NCBI GenBank assembly: GCA_033442325.1
Contig: JAWQFM010000004.1
Location: 1-39,477 of the forward strand
From: Salpingoeca rosetta
Taxonomy: Eukaryota; Protista; Choanoflagellata
DNA length: 39,477 nucleotides
Direction: 5' to 3'
Positions 31,940 through 39,477 of this stretch are shown piece after piece; the stretch's first letter is position 1; each line of letters opens with the position of its first letter. A program made the translations under genes and the position numbers. The notes under the pieces are model-generated. The model saw only the letters and a list, made by a program, of their open reading frames with translations, searched no databases and had not been told where the DNA came from.

Positions 31940-34900
31940 ATGTCCGAGAAGAGAGCGAGGAGGGAGGTGGAGGCGTTGCTGGCGCAAACGAAGCTGCCTG
32001 CAAAGAAGGAGAAACGGGTGAAGGACAAGATCAGAGCCATCGCCAACAACACGTGTGGGGAGATAGCAGAGTGAGTGCAAAAGCAACCAAAACGACGTGT
32101 TGGAACATGCATGCATGTGTTGGACACACGGACACTTCTTGTGGTTGTGCTTATTCTCCCCTCTCTCTCTGCTTGGCTTGTCCTTGTGTTGCAATGAGCT
32201 TGGTGTGGCTTGCTGTTGGGTGTTTACGTGTGCGCGTCCCCTCGCACCGCCTGGACACACTGTGTGTGTTTGTGGCAGGTTGGGACTGGCACCCTCATGT
32301 TTTTGCTCTCTTCATCCTCAGTCTTCTTGCTCATTGCATGACACACACCATTTGGAATGTTAGCTTGTATGATGCTGGCCTCGGCGTCATTGGGGCGCGT
32401 GCGGTGGCCGAGGCGCTCAAGGACAACACCTGCCTCAAACGACTCTAGTGCGTGGTGATGATGAATCTGCACCGTGTGACATGCATGGTTGATTGGGATG
32501 GCGGTGTTGCATGTTGCACCCCTTTTCTCCTCCCCTGTTTGCGCATGTTTGGCCGTGTGTTCACCTTCGCTCCCCGCGTTTCGTGTGTGCCTGCACAGCC
32601 TGGACAACAATTCCATCGGCGATGAGGGCGCTGTGGCGTTGGCGGAGATGCTGAAGCACAACACGACCCTCAAAGAACTCTTGTGAGTGTACACGCACAC
32701 ACACACACACACATGTGTGCTGCGTCACTGCCTGTTGCACCTTATCACGTGCACACGTGCCCATGTGTGGATTGGTGACTGTGTTGCCACCCACAACAAT
32801 CATCATCACGCACGCACGCACTCACTCTTCCTCACCCATGTGGCATCATCGCCCTGTGTGGCATCCACCATACCGTCTTGACAGCCTGTACAACAACTCC
32901 ATCGGCGATGAGGGCGCCGTGGCGTTGGCGGAGATGTTGAAGCACAACACGACCCTCAAAAGGCTCGAGTGAGTGTGTACACGCACACATGTACATGTAT
33001 GCTGCGTCACTGTCGTTGCACCTTATCACGTGCACATGTGTGGATTGATGACTGTGTTGACACCTACAACAATCATCATCACTCACTCACTCACTCTTTC
33101 TCATCCATGTGGCAACATCGCCCTGCGTGGCATCATACCGTCTTGGCAGCCTGGATGGCAATTCCATCGGTCCTGAGGGCGCTGTGGCGTTGGCGGAGAT
33201 GCTGAAGCACAACACGGCCCTCAAACAACTCCAGTGAGTGGAAGCTCCTCTTTGAAATGTGTGTCTTTAGGCGCTTCTTCTGCAATACCCATGTGCAGAT
33301 GGAGGCACTGCAAGCCACCCACGATGTCCCTGCGACTTGCTTGTTTGACCAACCAACAGATGCTTCCAGCCTTCACCTGTGCCACAAATGCTGCCACATC
33401 TTGTACAACTGGCATTGCCCCCTTTGCTTCCGCCATTGTGACTTCAATGTCGTAGGACCTGATGTGCGAGCGAGTACGCGTGCACGTGATCCATATGCAA
33501 CCCACTTTCATCCATGACACTGACAATTGCTGCTTGTCCACCCGTTCCCCCTGCTCTTCCAACATGCATTTCTTGCCACTTGCAGCTTGACCAAGAACTC
33601 CATCACCCCGGTTGGCGGTGCGGCGCTGGGTGCCGCACTGGACCAGAACCGCACCCTGTCTCGGCTTGAGTACGTCAATTGCGTTGCGCCTGCCTCATGA
33701 ACGCCTGTGTCCTGTTGTGGATTTGTGTGACCAATCGCCACTCTTTTGAGTGCACGCCACACTGTGTGTGTTCCTCTCTGCTTGCTTGCATTTCTCCACA
33801 ACCCTAACCACCAACCCTCCTGACCCACGCACCGCACTTGCTGCCTGTTCCCAACCACACGCTACCACCACGTGTCCTCGTTTAGGATCAACAAGAACTC
33901 CACCGCCACCGCCCGCGCCTTTGGTGCCGCGCTGCCCGTCGACCGAGAACTCTACACAGATTGGTCAGTCAACGCGTGCTTCCACTCTAGTCGCTTGCTC
34001 CCTGCCTTCTCTCTGAATTCTTCACCTCACACACACACACGCTGCGTGGTGCTTGCGCCCAATGTCGCGTGGGATCACAGGAGTGGCGATGATGAGGGCA
34101 AGGCCGCCTTTAACGAAGCACGCGAGGAGAAGAAGCGGCAGCATGAGCAACTGTTTGCCGCCTGCAGGGATGGCGACGCTTCCGTTGTCACCTCCCTCAT
34201 GGAGCAGGACAATGCAGACATCAACCAACAGGACAAGCGGGTATGTTCATCATGTGTGTGTTGTGCTTGTATGTGAACGGCGCTCGCTCATGGTTGCACC
34301 GGCCGTGTGTTCGTTTCCAACAGATCCTCACCACACGTGCCATGCCCCTTCCTGCCCCCCACCCAAACACAGGGCGACACACCGCTGCACGTTGCCTGCA
34401 GGCACAACCAGCCCGCCGTCGTGGAGCTGCTCCTGAAGAAGGGCGCAGACACTGCCGTCAAGAACATCAGGGTACGCGCGCATGTGCCGTGGGTGCGACG
34501 CCTTTATTGCACAACCGCGCCTCTTTTCAATGTGCACTGCTTCTGTGCTCGCTCACTCTGTCCGCATCCAACATCCACAGGGTGGAACACCATTCATGGT
34601 GGCGCAGAAACGCAATTTCCACGCCATCACCAGTATCCCAGGGCTCGACCCAGACAGCAAACCCCAGCAACAACCACAGCAACAACAGCAACAACCAAAG
34701 CAAGAGCAGCAGCAGGCGGACATGACAGCTTCAGACACACCAGATACAGAGCATGTACGTGCACAGGAAACCCATTGTCGTTTGCACTGCTGTACCACTT
34801 CAGACTTTTTTTCCTGTGAACCTCTTGCAACACACGCATCCGCCTTATCGTCTTGTGCGCCGCCATCATCCACCATCATACACCATCATCCATTCATTCC

Positions 34901-35865
34901 CCGCCAACGCCAATGCCCCCGCTGATGTACACAGGTGCACAGAGAGGCGGTGCAGGCGCGCATGATGGACATTGCGGAGCGCTCCGACACGCACATGGCG
35001 GGGCGAGCCAAGATGGGAGTATCTGGCCAGGGCCGCGCGGGCAAGACGACGCTTGTGAACTCGCTCAGGGGTAAGCCGTTCAACAAGCAGCAGCACTCCA
35101 CGCTCGGCGCCACCACCGATGACATGAGAGTCACCGTCCACACCATGGAAGTGTGCGACTGGAAGGTACGTTTAGTTGCGTGTATGTGCACGTGATTGTG
35201 TGTGTGTGTGTGTGATATGTGCATCCACCTTGTACCAACACTTTCCACCATCATTCGATCAATCACCACCTTATGTCATTGTTCACCAACACTCACAAAC
35301 ACCCACCCTTCCACATCTCGTGCAGGAGAGTGACCAGAGCACGTCCGAGTTCATCCGCAGTCTCGTTGGCACGGCGATGGCACGCGAGGCCGGCGTGGAC
35401 GAGGAGCTGAAGCGCGCGTCAGCAAAGGCACAGGCGCAGCACGCCACCCGTGTTAACCAGCACCAGCGCGAGAACGAGGACAAGGATGCCAAGAAGCAGC
35501 GCAAGAAGGGCCGTGACACATCCACAACTTCCACCCCCTCATCCGACAAGGCGTCCACCGCAGCCGTGCCTGCACCTGCTGCAGGTCGTGATGCCTCCAC
35601 AGCAACGCCTGCAGCAAAGGAGCAGCACCCAGCTTCCAGCCACGCCGACGTTGGTGACGACGATGCTGACGTCGTTGCCGTGACCACACCATCCGTTTCG
35701 AAGGAGGAGGTGGAGAAGGCAATCAAGGACATGGACTTTGATGCGACAATTCGCGAAGGCAAGATGCAGGTCTCCTTCAAGATCTTCGACCTGGGCGGCC
35801 AGTCCACCTTCTACGTCTTTCACCCTTTCTTCCTCACCAAGTGAGTCGCTGTGTGTATGCGTGCA

Positions 35866-35957
<92 letters not shown>

Positions 35958-37937
35958 TGTGTGTACGAGTGTGTGTGGTTATGTGTAAAAGAGGAAAGGA
36001 TAGTCAAAAAGAACAAAAAGGAGCCAAGAAAAGAAGGNNNNNNNNNNNNNNNNNNNNNNNNNNNNNNNNNNNNNNNNNNNNNNNNNNNNNNNNNNNNNNN
36101 NNNNNNNNNNNNNNNNNNNNNNNNNNNNNNNNNNNNNAGTGCTACCCCCCCCAAACCCTTACCCTTTCTCATCCCCACCCTTTTACTCCCAACATCCCCC
36201 CAACAGGTACGCGGTGTACCTGCTGGTGTTCTCGATGGAGGACCTGCTGCACCAAGACGAGAGCAAGCGGACAGAGGCGTGGGAGTTTATGGAGCACTGG
36301 TTGTCTTCTCTCCACCTCCACGCCAAGGGTGCACCCGTCCTCATCGTCGGCACCTTCGCTGATGTGGTCAGCAAGAGGAAGCAGCACGAACACATCTCGC
36401 GTGACATCCACAGCCGCCTGCGCCACAACCCAGCCTTCGCTTCTGTTGTGTACAACAGCAAGCACAAGCTGTGGTTCTGGCCCGTCGACAACACCAAGTC
36501 CATCGGCGACCCCATGATCCAGGGCCTGCGCCAGACCATCTCCTCCACAGCACTGGCGCAGGAGTACGTGAGCCAGGAGGTCGCTGTACCCTACCTCCAC
36601 CTCTACGACAAGCTCAACGCCATTGCCCGCGACGAGAAGCGGCCGCTGCTCACGTTTGACGAGGTGGTCCAGATTGCGCGCACCTGTGGGCTGCGCACAC
36701 GTGAGGAGACGAGGGCCTGCCTGCAGTTCCTGCACCTGTACTCCATGGTGCTGTACTACGACAGCGTGCCAGGCATGGAAGACTATGTGATCCTGAGCCC
36801 GCAGTGGGCGGTGGACACGATGACGCGCGTCATCCGCACGTTTGGCCTGCACGACGACGATGTGCAGGGGCCGGAGGTGCGGGCACTCGGCGCCGACGTG
36901 TGGGACGACCTTGTCGACCGCGGCATCCTGCACCGTCGTCTGCTGGAGGTGTTGTGGAGAGACGTGGACAGCGACTTGGTTGACCCGTTCCTGCGCCTCA
37001 TGATGCAATATGGGCTGTGCATTCAATACTCTCCACCCAAGCTGGTGGACAGCCGCAGAGCACTCGCCCGCGCCAACTCCGGCCACGGTGACAACGATGG
37101 TGTGAGCAAGGGCAATGACGCACACCAACGCCAGCAGCACCAGCAGCAGCAATACCTGGTCCCAGCCATTCTGCCAATGACGATTCGCCACAACAACAGC
37201 ACGATGGCATCCGTGTCGCTGAGCACGACGGCAGCACAGCAGGCCAACCCATATCTTGGACACGAGGAGAAGACGGCCTACGTCGCCTTCAGCCTGAAGC
37301 AATTCAAGCGAAGTGCGAGCGTGCGAGCTGAGCATGCACAGCACGCATCGTTCCTGCCAGAGGGGCTGTTCACAGTTGTGCTGGCGCATGTGATGGCGCA
37401 TGCACAGCACGGCGCATCACAGGAGCCGCAGCTGAGCCGCACCCACGCCATCTGCTTCATGGAGTCGACCAAGCTGGAGCTGCAGCTTGTGCCGGCTGTT
37501 GGCGGCATCAAGATGAAGATCACGAGCGCACAGCCACGCGCCATGCTGCACATGCTGCACACCATGATCAGCGAGGCCGCCAGAGAGCGCTATCCTGAGC
37601 TGAAGAGCAGCCTGTTGTTGCCGTACGACGACAAGACGCTGCTGTTCTTTGAGGATGTGCTGCACCACCACAAGAGCAAGCAGGACATGTGGGTGGACGA
37701 GCAGCTGCTGTCACCCGATGACCTGGTCGCCAAGTACGGCCCTCTTCTGCCCGTTCTCGGCCTGCAGGACAAGTACGACGTCTTCATCAGCTACAGGTGA
37801 GACGGTGTGCGTGTGTGTGTGTGTGTGTGTGCGTGCTTATGCGTGCGTGCGTGTGTGTGTACGTGCGTATGTGTACGTGTGTGTGTGTGTGTGTGTGTGT
37901 GTGCAAGTGTGTGTGTATGTGTGTGTGTGCGTGCGTG

Positions 37938-37969
<32 letters not shown>

Positions 37970-39216
37970 CAAGGATGTCTGTCACTTTCACCCAGTAGCC
38001 ACGACTAATGCATGCAGTTTACACTTTTCTCAACACTACCTTTTCAACCCCCCCCCCCCCAGGCAACGCGCCAACAGCGGGCTGGTGATGGCGCTGCATC
38101 CGCGCTTGGAGCAGCGCAACCTGGTGGCGTTCCTGGACGCCAACAACCTGGAGACGGGCCTCAACTTCAAGTTGTCGTTCATGACGGCGATTGGGCTGAG
38201 TCTGGTGGTGTGCCCCATCGCGTCTGCTGCCACCATCATGCAGATGAGGCAGCTGCAGCACAGCGACTACTGCGACAACGTGCTGCTGGAGTGGATGACG
38301 ATGCTGGCGCTGCACGAGTTCCAGCGGGCGCACGAGGAAGATGAGGAGCAGCAACATGCCAAGATCCGCCTTCGCCGTGTCGTGCCCGTGATTGTTGGCA
38401 GCGCGTGGCACAATGTGAACGATAGCAGCAGCATGAGCAGGGCCGAGGTGAGCGAGTACGACTCGTTTGACCGCCTGAAGCGGCTGGCGATGACGTTGCC
38501 TGATGTTGTAAGCAAGGAGACAGCCGTAGCGCTGGACCAGTATTTCACGCAGGTGCTACACTTGCCACCGCCACAGCAGCACAAGAGTGTACGTGAGACT
38601 GTGTTGTCACTGTTTGACATTGACGCGGTGGTTGCTTTGAATGCTGTTGTGGACCGCACGTCACAGCTGCGCGACATTGCAGAGAAGGTGCGCCAGGTTG
38701 CCGTCTCTGCCAGAAGCGACGAACAAACAACGCAGGAAGCAGGCACAGCACGTCGATCCACGCAGGTATGGTATTTTGTGTGTGTGTGTGTATGTGTATG
38801 TGTGTGTGTGTGCGCGCGTCCATGCCTGCAGGCGCATCCCTGGCAGCTTGGCGTTCACACTCTGTTTCACCCACCCCTTTCACCCACATATCCAGCAGTC
38901 CTCCTTGTCGCTCTCGTCCACCACCGCGACAACTCCTGCTCCACCGCCACCCGCCACCCCATCTTCCTCCTCGTCCTCCTCATTGCCATTTGAGCCAGAT
39001 CTCGTTCAATGGCTCAACCGCCACTCGCTGCTGCCGCACGTCGAGTCCGCCCTGGTGGAGCACGGCATCGACTGCCTGGAGGTGCTAGTCGTGTCTGTTC
39101 ATGAGGATTTGCTCACGATGCAAATGTTGAAAGGTGCGGGTGTGAGAGTGGGCCACGCAGTCAAGCTGGTGCGAGAGGCAATGAAGTGTTATGTGGACGC
39201 AAGCTCAGCGTATTAG
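31940..39216 (+). CDS. ROCO-family protein LRR(6)-ankyrin-Roc GTPase-COR-TIR-SAM, ~1473 aa. Exons 31940-32070, 32364-32447, 32599-32682, 32885-32968, 33150-33233, 33586-33669, 33886-33963, 34081-34240, 34373-34471, 34581-34754, 34935-35165, 35326-35840, 36207-37796, 38063-38765, 38896-39216
   Basis: All 14 introns are GT-AG and phases agree, giving 4422 nt of open frame from ATG to TAG (assuming no exon is hidden in gap 36038-36137). Ribonuclease-inhibitor-type LRRs ([23 protein letters not shown]); ankyrin GDTPLHVAC; P-loop GQGRAGKT; [16 protein letters not shown]; VLIVGTFAD; COR motifs [20 protein letters not shown] and YLVPAIL; [12 protein letters not shown]...AFLD...DNVLLEW; SAM DLVQWL...[10 protein letters not shown]...[10 protein letters not shown]. 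Confidence 0.92.
32599..33233 (+). repeat. Tandem duplication of LRR exon plus intron cassettes (three near-identical 84-nt exons, two homologous introns; period 286 and 265 bp)
   Basis: Introns 32683-32884 and 32969-33149 align end to end, sharing gctgcgtcactg, gttgcaccttatcacgtgcaca, catgtgtggattg, caacaatcatcatcac and cataccgtcttg(a/g)cag. Confidence 0.95.
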
Positions 39217-39477
39217 CTCTTGGCCACTTGCCTCGTGGCACGCCCTTTCTTCTCTTTCACCACCGTCCATTTTGTGGCTTCTATTCTCTCCTCCAGTCCT
39301 GTCACCGTGGTGCAGTTGTTACATTTCGTCCATCACCCACTGTTCTGTTACACGCACGCCAGTTGTGGTTTCCTTCCTTGACGCTCGCTTGTGTTCCACT
39401 GCTCTGTGCTACTGCTGCTGCTGCTGCTGCTGCTGCTGTTGTTGTTGTTGTTCTTGTTCTTGTTGTTGTTTAAGTTG

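What the first reader, a model, noticed from the sequence alone, without database searches (positions are those of the whole stretch)
37771..38320. SARM1-like TIR domain retains the putative NADase catalytic glutamate
Seen: [39 protein letters not shown]...[17 protein letters not shown], with the Glu codon at 38289-38291. Established: enzymatic TIRs (SARM1, plant TNLs, bacterial ThsB) need a Glu in helix alphaC; in SARM1 the context, as recalled, is DVFISYRR...VFIDVEKLEAG...KDWVHKEIVTAL. Inference: the spacing matches, so the output may be NAD+ depletion or cyclic-ADPR-type signalling rather than adaptor scaffolding.
Basis: partly seen in the sequence, partly recalled or inferred. Interest (0 to 1): 0.75.

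Follow-up and report, generated by a model that had tools for sequence, protein, structure and literature searches.

The report
Catalytic-type TIR in choanoflagellate ROCO gene

Summary
The window carries a spliced eukaryotic gene: (LRR)-Ank-Roc-COR-TIR-SAM. The TIR is split by a 266-base GT-AG intron (37797-38062) right after "..DVFISY" plus AG of the Arg codon. GAG at 38289-38291 is residue 76 of the TIR exon.

Evidence that Glu76 is the catalytic glutamate:
- It lies in the first turns of a confidently modelled helix alphaC, in a TIR fold (VIA Z 13.3 to plant RPV1/RUN1 TIRs, about 10 to human SARM1 TIR).
- A weak family-profile match aligns it with SARM1 E642.
- It sits in the only nine-residue invariant block (CDNVLLEWM) of 18 aligned, full-length paralogous TIR exons.
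- Of 42 copies in the genome, 36 keep Glu. The six that lost it are truncated or degenerate.

bioRxiv 10.64898/2026.04.20.719644 tested the TIR of paralogue F2UB80, which is locus L021 here (67% identical). It assigned the same column (E1118) as catalytic by structure and detected canonical cADPR in E. coli, with no NAD+ depletion flagged.

"SARM1-like" is only loosely true: there is no ARM domain, a single SAM follows the TIR, and the residues at W638 and H640 differ. The scan has also noted ROCO-TIR genes elsewhere in this genome.

The parts
31940..33669 (+). LRR exon cassettes at the N-terminal (sensor) end of the same gene
   Evidence: Taken from earlier scan notes s1-431380 and s1-431386. 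Not re-tested here: one 31-residue exon piece gave no Pfam hit.
34082..34754 (+). Three ankyrin-repeat exons (about 34082-34240, 34373-34471, 34581-34754)
   Evidence: Pfam Ank 39.9 bits, E 3.9e-10, for 34373-34471, and a weak Ank hit for 34082-34240. GT/AG junctions were read from the sequence.
34935..35840 (+). Roc GTPase exons 1 and 2 (34935-35165 with the P-loop GQGRAGKT; 35326-35840 with DLGGQ)
   Evidence: The Pfam Roc profile is matched in consecutive pieces: positions 2-46 (25.7 bits) and 49-77 (16.3 bits).
36038..36137 (.). Run of 100 N inside the Roc intron (35841-36206)
   Evidence: The gap lies between the donor AA|GTGAGT and the acceptor CAG|G, so no coding sequence appears to be lost.
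36207..37796 (+). Exon holding the last part of Roc, COR-A, COR-B and the first TIR strand (betaA, ..KYDVFISY + AG)
   Evidence: Pfam COR-A 69 bits, E 5.3e-19. COR-B is weak at 14.2 bits. The exon end was read from the sequence.
37797..38062 (+). Phase-2 GT-AG intron that splits the Arg codon of S-Y-R inside the TIR domain
   Evidence: same position in 30/30 paralogues, with lengths of 99-337 bases.
38063..38765 (+). TIR exon (alphaA to alphaE plus a long C-terminal helix), 234 codons from 38064
   Evidence: Pfam TIR_2 E 0.011. AF2 mean pLDDT 84, pTM 0.83. VIA Z 13.3 to the RPV1 TIR and 9.8-10.3 to SARM1 TIR residues 570-700.
38136..38171 (+). BB-loop region D25-K36 ([12 protein letters not shown])
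   Evidence: D25, N27, N28, L29, E30, G32, N34, F35 and K36 are invariant in 18 paralogues. The region aligns to SARM1 D594..G601..F603. The model is poor here (pLDDT below 50 at residues 28-31) because betaA is absent from the folded piece.
38271..38297 (+). Invariant block C-D-N-V-L-L-E-W-M at the start of helix alphaC
   Evidence: Residues C70-M78 are invariant in 18 full-length paralogues. The block is kept in 34 of the 42 copies tabulated.
38289..38291 (+). GAG codon of Glu76, the putative catalytic glutamate
   Evidence: It is the same column as E1118 of F2UB80 in the preprint's Table S4.
38766..38895 (+). GT-AG intron between the TIR and SAM exons (phase 0)
   Evidence: Read from the sequence. 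The acceptor could also lie 3 bases later (cagcag); this was not resolved.
38896..39216 (+). Last exon: Ser/Pro-rich linker, then a SAM-like five-helix domain (38983-39213) and the stop codon at 39214-39216
   Evidence: Pfam SAM_2 19.2 bits against a cutoff of 20.5. AF2 pLDDT 91 with five helices. Foldseek TMq 0.73 to the CASKIN2 SAM, with other SAM domains also listed. A homologous exon follows the TIR exon in at least 24 loci.

Best explanation
Glu76 of the TIR exon (GAG 38289-38291) is the counterpart of the alphaC catalytic glutamate of NAD-cleaving TIR domains. This TIR is most likely an enzyme that converts NAD+ mainly into canonical cyclic ADP-ribose once several TIRs are brought together.

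Shown here:
- The fold is a TIR.
- The Glu sits early in alphaC, inside the most conserved block of a family of at least 36 copies.
- The other columns matching SARM1 residues needed for activity or assembly (Y568, R569, D594, G601, F603) are kept.
- A sister copy with the same motifs has published cADPR-synthase activity.

Inferred, not shown: in the full protein, the LRR/Ank end senses a ligand. The Roc-COR GTPase acts as the switch and dimerisation device. The C-terminal SAM domain helps to cluster TIRs, so that the BB loop of one TIR completes the active site of the next. The nucleotide product, or a local NAD+ loss, is then the output.
For: Sequence and splice structure.

Fold. All of the top 35 structural matches are TIR domains, and catalytic TIRs rank above the adaptors TRIF (Z 7.8) and MyD88 (Z 7.3).

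Alignment to SARM1: one search pairs E76 with E642, D25 with D594, G32 with G601, and F35 with F603.

Conservation. Glu is kept in 36 of 42 copies, and all six losses are in truncated or degenerate copies. Synonymous changes occur in the flanking codons.

Experiment on a paralogue: bioRxiv 10.64898/2026.04.20.719644, Table S4 row 33. F2UB80_1 has its TIR at 1034-1255 and catalytic residue 1118, and is marked active, with cADPR yes. By eye, its exon-2 part is identical to locus L021, which is 67% identical to the window exon. None of the 85 differences touch Q1, R2, N4, G6, D25, N27-G32, N34-K36 or C70-M78. Counting from K1034, E1118 is exon residue 76.

Preprint text: cADPR production depended on the glutamate in all cases.

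TIR-SAM pairing is conserved in at least 24 loci.
Against: - No assay exists for this copy, and 33% of its TIR-exon residues differ from the tested one.
- The profile match to SARM1 is not significant on its own (E 1.2).
- The TIR_2 Pfam score of the exon alone (16.7 bits) is below the 28-bit cutoff.
- The folded piece lacks strand betaA, which lies in the previous exon. Strand betaB and the BB loop are therefore poorly modelled, and I could not check that the Glu side chain points into a formed pocket.
- The column of SARM1 W638 holds Asn, and W638A cuts SARM1 kcat 100- to 400-fold (PMC8266388).
- The preprint notes that some TIRs with the Glu (TLR2, IL-1R9/10) are inactive.
- An oomycete TIR with a similar D-N-L-L-L-E-Y motif is not marked active in Table S4.
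- I have no evidence that this particular copy, which lies at a contig end, is expressed.
Confidence: 0.75

Rival explanations
1. The TIR is an NAD+-depleting executioner like SARM1. The biologically relevant output is loss of NAD+ and cell death or dormancy, and cADPR is only a by-product.
For: SARM1 is the best PDB sequence match and shares betaA (D-V-F-I-S-Y-R) and the BB-loop residues. A SAM domain is attached, as in SARM1. The related Guillardia theta TIR (D-H-V-L-M-E-W motif) both made cADPR and depleted NAD+.
Against: For the S. rosetta paralogue, the NAD+-depletion column of Table S4 is empty. The preprint states that most cADPR-producing TIRs did not deplete NAD+, even after overnight expression. 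However, isolated TIRs in E. coli lack the SAM domain and the rest of the protein, so the full enzyme could be much faster.
Confidence: 0.2
2. The TIR acts only as a protein-protein adaptor, and the Glu is kept for structural reasons.
For: Some animal TIRs keep the Glu yet show no activity (preprint discussion). Several SARM1 active-site or assembly residues (W638, H640) are not kept.
Against: A 67%-identical paralogue with identical motifs is catalytically active. The fold ranks closer to catalytic TIRs than to MyD88 or TRIF. No MyD88-like partner is known in choanoflagellates (PMC6040629).
Confidence: 0.05
3. This particular copy is a silent or decaying contig-end duplicate. The sequence still looks intact, but it is not expressed or not functional, and the function resides in other family members.
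For: The window is the first 39.5 kb of contig C4. The family has many copies, including fragments and pseudogenes. A 99%-identical twin exists on contig C26. There is a 100-N gap in the gene. No exact public protein for this copy turned up in the one word search run.
Against: All exons examined from Ank to SAM are open, with canonical GT-AG junctions. The N run lies in an intron. All catalytic and BB-loop motifs are intact. The word search could only see proteins of 129-410 residues, so its blank says nothing about a full-length model.
Confidence: 0.12
4. The TIR makes a different product or uses a different substrate: 2'cADPR or 3'cADPR, ADPR-linked signals, or 2',3'-cNMP from nucleic acids as reported for plant TIRs.
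For: The best structural matches are plant NLR TIRs (RPV1/RUN1, Z 13, 150 residues aligned). A Cys (C70) is invariant six residues before the Glu. The residue at the W638 column differs, and I recall (not checked here) that it lies near the bound nucleotide in other TIRs.
Against: For the paralogue, only canonical cADPR is ticked in Table S4 and the 2' and 3' isomer columns are empty. The motifs are identical between the two copies.
Confidence: 0.08

Closest known systems
S. rosetta F2UB80 TIR domain (preprint id F2UB80_1; locus L021 = G000:C13:1705970-1706641, minus strand)
   Same: It belongs to the same gene family and genome. It has the same intron position, the same C-D-N-V-L-L-E-W-M and D-A-N-N-L-E-T-G motifs, and the same TIR-then-SAM order. 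The TIR exon is 67% identical, and the catalytic residue E1118 is the same column as Glu76.
   Different: There are 85 differences over 234 aligned exon positions (substitutions plus gaps), mostly in alphaA, alphaB, the loop after alphaC and the tail. F2UB80 has been assayed (cADPR in E. coli); the window copy has not.
Human SARM1 TIR domain (PDB 6O0Q and others; catalytic E642)
   Same: Both have the TIR fold (Z 9.8-10.3, 131 of about 140 residues aligned). The betaA strand D-V-F-I-S-Y-R is identical. Aligned D594, L598, E599, G601, F603, D634, D637, V639 and E642 are conserved. Both have an attached SAM domain, and both make cADPR.
   Different: Sequence identity is only 15-18%. W638, H640 and K641 are replaced by N, L and L. 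The window TIR has about 90 extra residues (alphaD insertions and a long C-terminal helix). Its architecture is LRR-Ank-Roc-COR-TIR-SAM rather than ARM-SAM-SAM-TIR. The preprint lists a different representative domain for SARM1.
Plant NLR TIR domains (RPV1 5KU7, RUN1 7S2Z/7RX1, RPS4, L6)
   Same: These are the best structural matches (Z 11.9-13.3, 146-153 residues, rmsd 2.7-3.0). They share the extended alphaD region and are catalytic, Glu-dependent NADases attached to an LRR-bearing switch protein.
   Different: Identity is 12-14%. Plants use an NB-ARC ATPase switch, not Roc-COR. Plant TIRs carry S-x-W-C-x-x-E-L, whereas here the sequence is C-D-N-V-L-L-E-W. In Table S4 the plant control BdTIR makes mainly 2'cADPR, whereas the paralogue here makes canonical cADPR.
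Guillardia theta L1IYH1 TIR (preprint row 34) and the choanoflagellate TLR-type TIR at L035
   Same: They share the motif style around the Glu (D-H-V-L-M-E-W and D-N-V-L-L-E-Y), the S-Y-R-Q start and the long C-terminal extension. The Guillardia TIR makes cADPR.
   Different: They are distant in sequence: L035 is about 29-35% identical over the core. The Guillardia TIR also depleted NAD+. L035 is a transmembrane LRR receptor with a Gly-rich insertion in its TIR.
ROCO proteins (LRRK2, DAPK1, MFHAS1; brown-algal LRR-ROCOs, PMC11378527)
   Same: They share the Roc-COR tandem, here with LRR and Ank repeats upstream. Like the brown-algal ROCOs (paper title), this family is proposed as a set of candidate immune receptors with shuffled LRR exons (earlier scan notes).
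   Different: The output domain here is TIR plus SAM rather than a kinase or nothing.

Membership tests
TIR domain (Pfam TIR_2 PF13676 / TIR fold) | Profile match at the Pfam gathering score | tested here: inconclusive
   Exon 2 alone scores 16.7 bits (E 0.011) against a cutoff of 28. Strand betaA lies in the previous exon. P0005, which has betaA but stops before alphaC, scores 20.3 bits. The joined protein was not searched, under the rule on spliced models. The distant paralogue L035, which has no intron, passes at 35.4 bits.
TIR domain (Pfam TIR_2 PF13676 / TIR fold) | Flavodoxin-like alpha/beta fold superposable on solved TIR domains | tested here: met
   The AF2 model has pLDDT 84. The top 35 VIA matches are all TIR domains, with Z up to 13.3 (150 residues, 2.7 A).
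Catalytic (NAD+-cleaving) TIR domains | Glutamate on helix alphaC at the catalytic position | tested here: met
   E76 lies in helix 72-89, in a block with mean pLDDT 92. It aligns with SARM1 E642. It is the same column as E1118 of F2UB80, which the preprint assigned by the criterion of C-alpha within 3 A of ThsB E85. I could not do a residue-level superposition of my own model.
Catalytic (NAD+-cleaving) TIR domains | BB loop with conserved Asp and Gly needed for assembly of the composite active site | tested here: met
   D25 and G32 align with SARM1 D594 and G601 and are invariant in 18 paralogues. D594A and G601P reduce SARM1 activity (PMC8266388).
Catalytic (NAD+-cleaving) TIR domains | Aromatic residue four positions before the Glu (W-x-x-x-E) | tested here: not met
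   The column of SARM1 W638 holds N72, which is invariant in the family. The active paralogue has the same Asn, so this feature is not required in this subfamily.
Catalytic (NAD+-cleaving) TIR domains | Measured Glu-dependent NAD+ turnover | not testable with these tools
   Reported for paralogue F2UB80_1 only.
SARM1 orthologues | ARM - SAM - SAM - TIR architecture | tested here: not met
   The gene is (LRR)-Ank-Roc-COR-TIR-SAM, with no ARM domain and a single SAM after the TIR. Choanoflagellates are reported to have separate SARM1 homologues (PMC6040629).
ROCO proteins | Roc GTPase followed directly by a COR domain | tested here: met
   The Roc profile is matched in consecutive exon pieces (25.7 and 16.3 bits, each below the 27-bit cutoff because the domain is split). 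COR-A scores 69 bits against a cutoff of 35.3.
SAM domain | Profile match and five-helix SAM fold | tested here: inconclusive
   SAM_2 scores 19.2 bits against a cutoff of 20.5. The AF2 model has five helices at pLDDT 91. Foldseek TMq is 0.73 to the CASKIN2 SAM and 0.65 to the EphB2 SAM, but E-values are above 1. The profile search against PDB sequences was blank. One source names paralogue P0002 a 'SAM domain-containing protein'.

The most novel reading that the evidence does not exclude
The 36 or more LRR-Ank-Roc-COR-TIR-SAM genes of S. rosetta form a GTPase-switched innate immune receptor repertoire, an NLR analogue built on ROCO. On activation, they use SAM- and COR-driven clustering to switch on TIR cADPR/ADPR synthesis. 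That nucleotide then acts through a resident sensor, for instance the ADPR-gated TRPM2 channel-enzyme known in this species (PMC6461439). If so, a TIR-to-calcium immune pathway would already exist in the closest unicellular relatives of animals.
Probability: 0.2. Interest if true: 0.8.

Novelty: new member of a known kind. Interest (0 to 1): 0.3.

Why it matters
A conserved catalytic glutamate in a choanoflagellate TIR bears on whether enzymatic TIR signalling predates animals. An April 2026 preprint has already made that point experimentally, using a sister copy of this very gene family.

This window adds context rather than a new principle:
- The catalytic motif is held invariant across a large, fast-diversifying family, some of whose copies lie near contig ends.
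- It is lost only in decayed copies.
- The TIR is always followed by a SAM-like domain and preceded by a Roc-COR switch.

This makes the family a good system for asking how a GTPase switch gates a TIR enzyme, and what reads the cADPR signal in a unicellular relative of animals.

Tried and rejected
- Searching the single TIR exon against PDB sequences gave nothing. Only the family profile reached SARM1, and weakly.
- I first suspected that the Glu was out of register. Counting W-x-x-x-E from Tyr69 puts a Val at the catalytic position, with the Glu three residues later. I rejected this for three reasons. Tyr69 is variable in the family (Y/T/V/K/A). The invariant block starts at C70. The profile alignment and the preprint's structural assignment both put the Glu itself at the catalytic column.
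- The intron-free TLR-type TIR (L035) was searched against the PDB in the hope of a cleaner alignment. Its Gly-rich insert attracted only low-complexity hits.
- Foldseek E-values for the TIR model were weak (best 5e-3), probably because betaA is missing and the domain is about 90 residues longer than solved TIRs. VIA-align gave clear Z-scores.
- The SAM family profile against the PDB was blank.
- The spliced (joined) protein was not built, searched or folded.
- The large representative-protein search was not run, because the claim does not rest on absence of relatives.
- Seven long ORFs in the first 25 kb of the window gave no Pfam hit.
- The window start shows no telomere repeat, so I do not call the locus subtelomeric on my own evidence.
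Full report
WHAT IS IN THE SEQUENCE. The region is part of a spliced eukaryotic gene on the + strand.
- The long open frame 36139-37797 ends with ..[11 protein letters not shown] plus AG, followed by GTGAGA.
- After 266 bases rich in (TG)n and a C12 tract, CAG|G completes an AGG Arg codon.
- The frame then runs for 234 codons (38064-38765) and ends at CAG|GTATGG.
- A third exon (38896-39216) ends with a stop.

The same phase-2 intron is found after ..F-I-S-Y in 30 of 30 paralogues, with lengths of 99-337 bases. Public gene models of paralogues use the same junction (P0005 = PTSG_11392; F2UB80).

GENE AND ORGANISM. Exon by exon:
- Pfam finds ankyrin repeats (39.9 bits).
- It finds consecutive pieces of the Roc GTPase profile (positions 2-46 and 49-77).
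- It finds COR-A (69 bits), weak COR-B, weak TIR_2 (16.7 bits; betaA is in the previous exon) and borderline SAM_2 (19.2 against a cutoff of 20.5).
- Earlier scan notes place LRR exon cassettes upstream at 31940-33669. I did not re-test those.
- A run of 100 N (36038-36137) lies within a Roc intron.

The only named relatives found by the word search are Salpingoeca rosetta proteins. One locus of the same assembly encodes, residue for residue, the exon-2 part of the published S. rosetta F2UB80 TIR. The genome is therefore S. rosetta. It is not human, so the restriction on human contigs does not apply. The window is the first 39.5 kb of contig C4, and no telomere repeat is visible at its start.

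A rule I followed: the spliced protein was not joined, searched or folded. Each exon was handled by reference. The TIR model therefore lacks strand betaA.

IS IT A TIR, AND WHERE IS THE GLU?
- An AlphaFold2 model of the 234-residue exon, built with 21 relatives, has mean pLDDT 84 and pTM 0.83.
- VIA-align ranks only TIR domains in the first 35 places:
  - plant RPV1/RUN1, Z 13.2-13.3 (150-153 residues, 2.7-3.0 A);
  - human SARM1 TIR, Z 9.8-10.3 (131 residues, chain 570-700);
  - C. elegans TIR-1, Z 9.7;
  - the SPARTA TIR, and AbTir at Z 9.1.
- The adaptors TRIF (7.8) and MyD88 (7.3) fall lower.
- Glu76 lies in helix 72-89 (alphaC), in a block with mean pLDDT 92.
- A profile of 18 paralogous exons hits only one TIR family in the PDB, SARM1. 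The hit is weak (E 1.2). Its alignment pairs D25 with D594, G32 with G601, F35 with F603, D71 with D637, V73 with V639 and E76 with E642.
- I had suspected a register shift, because Y69 + 4 is a Val. But Y69 is variable, whereas C70-M78 is the only nine-residue invariant block in the 18 aligned full-length paralogues.
- The column of SARM1 W638 holds an invariant Asn.

FAMILY EVIDENCE.
- The genome holds 46 matches to this exon.
- Of 42 copies that span the motif, 36 have Glu (always GAG).
- The six exceptions are Lys x3, Gln, Met and one scrambled frame. All six are truncated fragments, lack the BB-loop motif, or carry stops.
- Flanking codons vary synonymously (D71 GAC/GAT 29/11; L74 and L75 use three or four Leu codons each). 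The block is therefore held by selection, not merely by recent copying.
- Glu76 is one of 11 invariant columns when a 27%-identical family member (L034) and a TLR-type TIR (L035, D-N-V-L-L-E-Y) are added.
- At least 24 loci carry a homologous SAM-like exon after the TIR exon.
- The SAM exon folds into five helices (pLDDT 91). Its best geometric matches are SAM domains (CASKIN2 TMq 0.73; EphB2, Shank2, Ste11), with weak E-values.

WHAT IS ALREADY KNOWN. Richter et al. 2018 (PMC6040629) reported that choanoflagellate SARM1 homologues keep the catalytic Glu, and that TIR occurs with Ank and other domains.

[quoted passage not shown] It tested 154 eukaryotic TIRs in E. coli.
- Table S4 row 33 is F2UB80_1 from S. 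rosetta: protein length 1352, TIR at 1034-1255, catalytic residue 1118.
- It is marked Active = yes and cADPR = yes. [quoted passage not shown]
- Its exon-2 part is that of my locus L021, which is 67% identical to the window exon.
- Counting from K1034, E1118 is exon residue 76.
- The authors called a Glu catalytic if its C-alpha lay within 3 A of ThsB E85 after TM-align. They clustered TIRs at 40% identity, so the window TIR falls well within that identity threshold.
- They state that cADPR production was abolished by mutating the Glu in all cases. They name S. rosetta among protists with cADPR-producing TIRs. The figure legend lists LRR, Roc and COR among the architectures.
- None of the 85 differences between the window TIR exon and F2UB80 fall in Q1, R2, N4, G6, D25, N27-G32, N34-K36 or C70-M78.

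MECHANISM.
- Shown: a TIR fold with the catalytic-position Glu and BB-loop residues under purifying selection, and enzyme activity in a close paralogue.
- Inferred from established knowledge of TIR NADases (SARM1, plant TNL resistosomes, AbTir filaments): activity needs TIR-TIR assembly, because the BB loop of one subunit completes the neighbour's site.
- In this protein, the likely assembly devices are COR-mediated dimerisation of the ROCO core, under control of the Roc nucleotide state, and the C-terminal SAM-like domain. The LRR/Ank end would act as the ligand sensor.
- Whether the output in vivo is a cADPR signal or NAD+ loss is open. The paralogue data favour signal production, but they come from an isolated TIR in bacteria.
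- A possible reader of ADPR-type products in this species is the ADPR-gated TRPM2 channel-enzyme (PMC6461439). This is an idea only and was not tested.

LIMITS.
- There is no assay and no expression evidence for this copy.
- The pocket could not be inspected, because betaA is missing from the model and the BB loop is poorly predicted (pLDDT below 50 at residues 28-31).
- The SARM1 alignment is not statistically significant by itself.
- W638A lowers SARM1 kcat 100- to 400-fold (PMC8266388), and this family has Asn at that column. This shows that the site is not SARM1-like in detail.
- An oomycete TIR with a similar motif is not marked active in Table S4.

VERDICT. The finding is a new member of a known kind. 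Interest is modest (0.3). The remaining value lies in the family-wide conservation pattern and the conserved Roc-COR-TIR-SAM layout.

Noticed in passing
L002 (G000:C26:1046451-1047152, minus strand): A near-twin of this gene's 3' end lies on another contig. Its TIR exon is 99% identical and its SAM exon 100% identical at the protein level, but the intron is a different length (327 against 266 bases). This looks like a recent duplication or gene conversion.
   Followed up: partly
L040 (G000:C25:1025653-1026417) and L041 (G000:C31:785086-785298): These are truncated TIR-exon fragments, two of them in tandem and annotated publicly as PTSG_10932 (P0001). The motif has become C-D-D-V-L-L-K-W, with Glu changed to Lys and Asn to Asp. 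They are decayed copies that lost the catalytic residue.
   Followed up: partly
L034 (G000:C4:943997-947377): This family member's upstream exon ends with the same 18 residues as the window gene (..[18 protein letters not shown]). Its TIR exon is only 27% identical and lacks the D-A-N-N-L-E-T-G loop, yet keeps L-L-L-E-W. The mosaic pattern suggests exon-level exchange.
   Followed up: no
L035 (G000:C17:945324-948548): This is an intron-free TLR-like gene (LRRs, EGF-like Cys pattern, TM helix, TIR). Its TIR passes Pfam TIR_2 (35.4 bits), keeps D-N-V-L-L-E-Y-E, and carries a long Gly-rich insertion after betaD.
   Followed up: partly
window 36038-36137: A run of exactly 100 N (assembly gap or withheld stretch) lies inside the intron between the second and third Roc exons. 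It follows a long (TG)n tract.
   Followed up: yes
window 37797-37960, 38766-38815, 38050-38061: (TG)n microsatellites start directly after both donor sites flanking the TIR exon, and a C12 tract precedes the TIR-exon acceptor. An earlier scan note (s1-436690) describes the same polarity elsewhere in this genome.
   Followed up: no
window 39410-39470: (CTG)n followed by (GTT)n trinucleotide repeats lie about 200 bases after the stop codon, in the presumed 3' UTR.
   Followed up: no
window 2097-24452: Seven ORFs of 375-699 codons on both strands in the first 25 kb gave no Pfam match at E <= 0.01. I did not determine whether they are real exons, repeats or chance frames in GC-rich DNA.
   Followed up: partly
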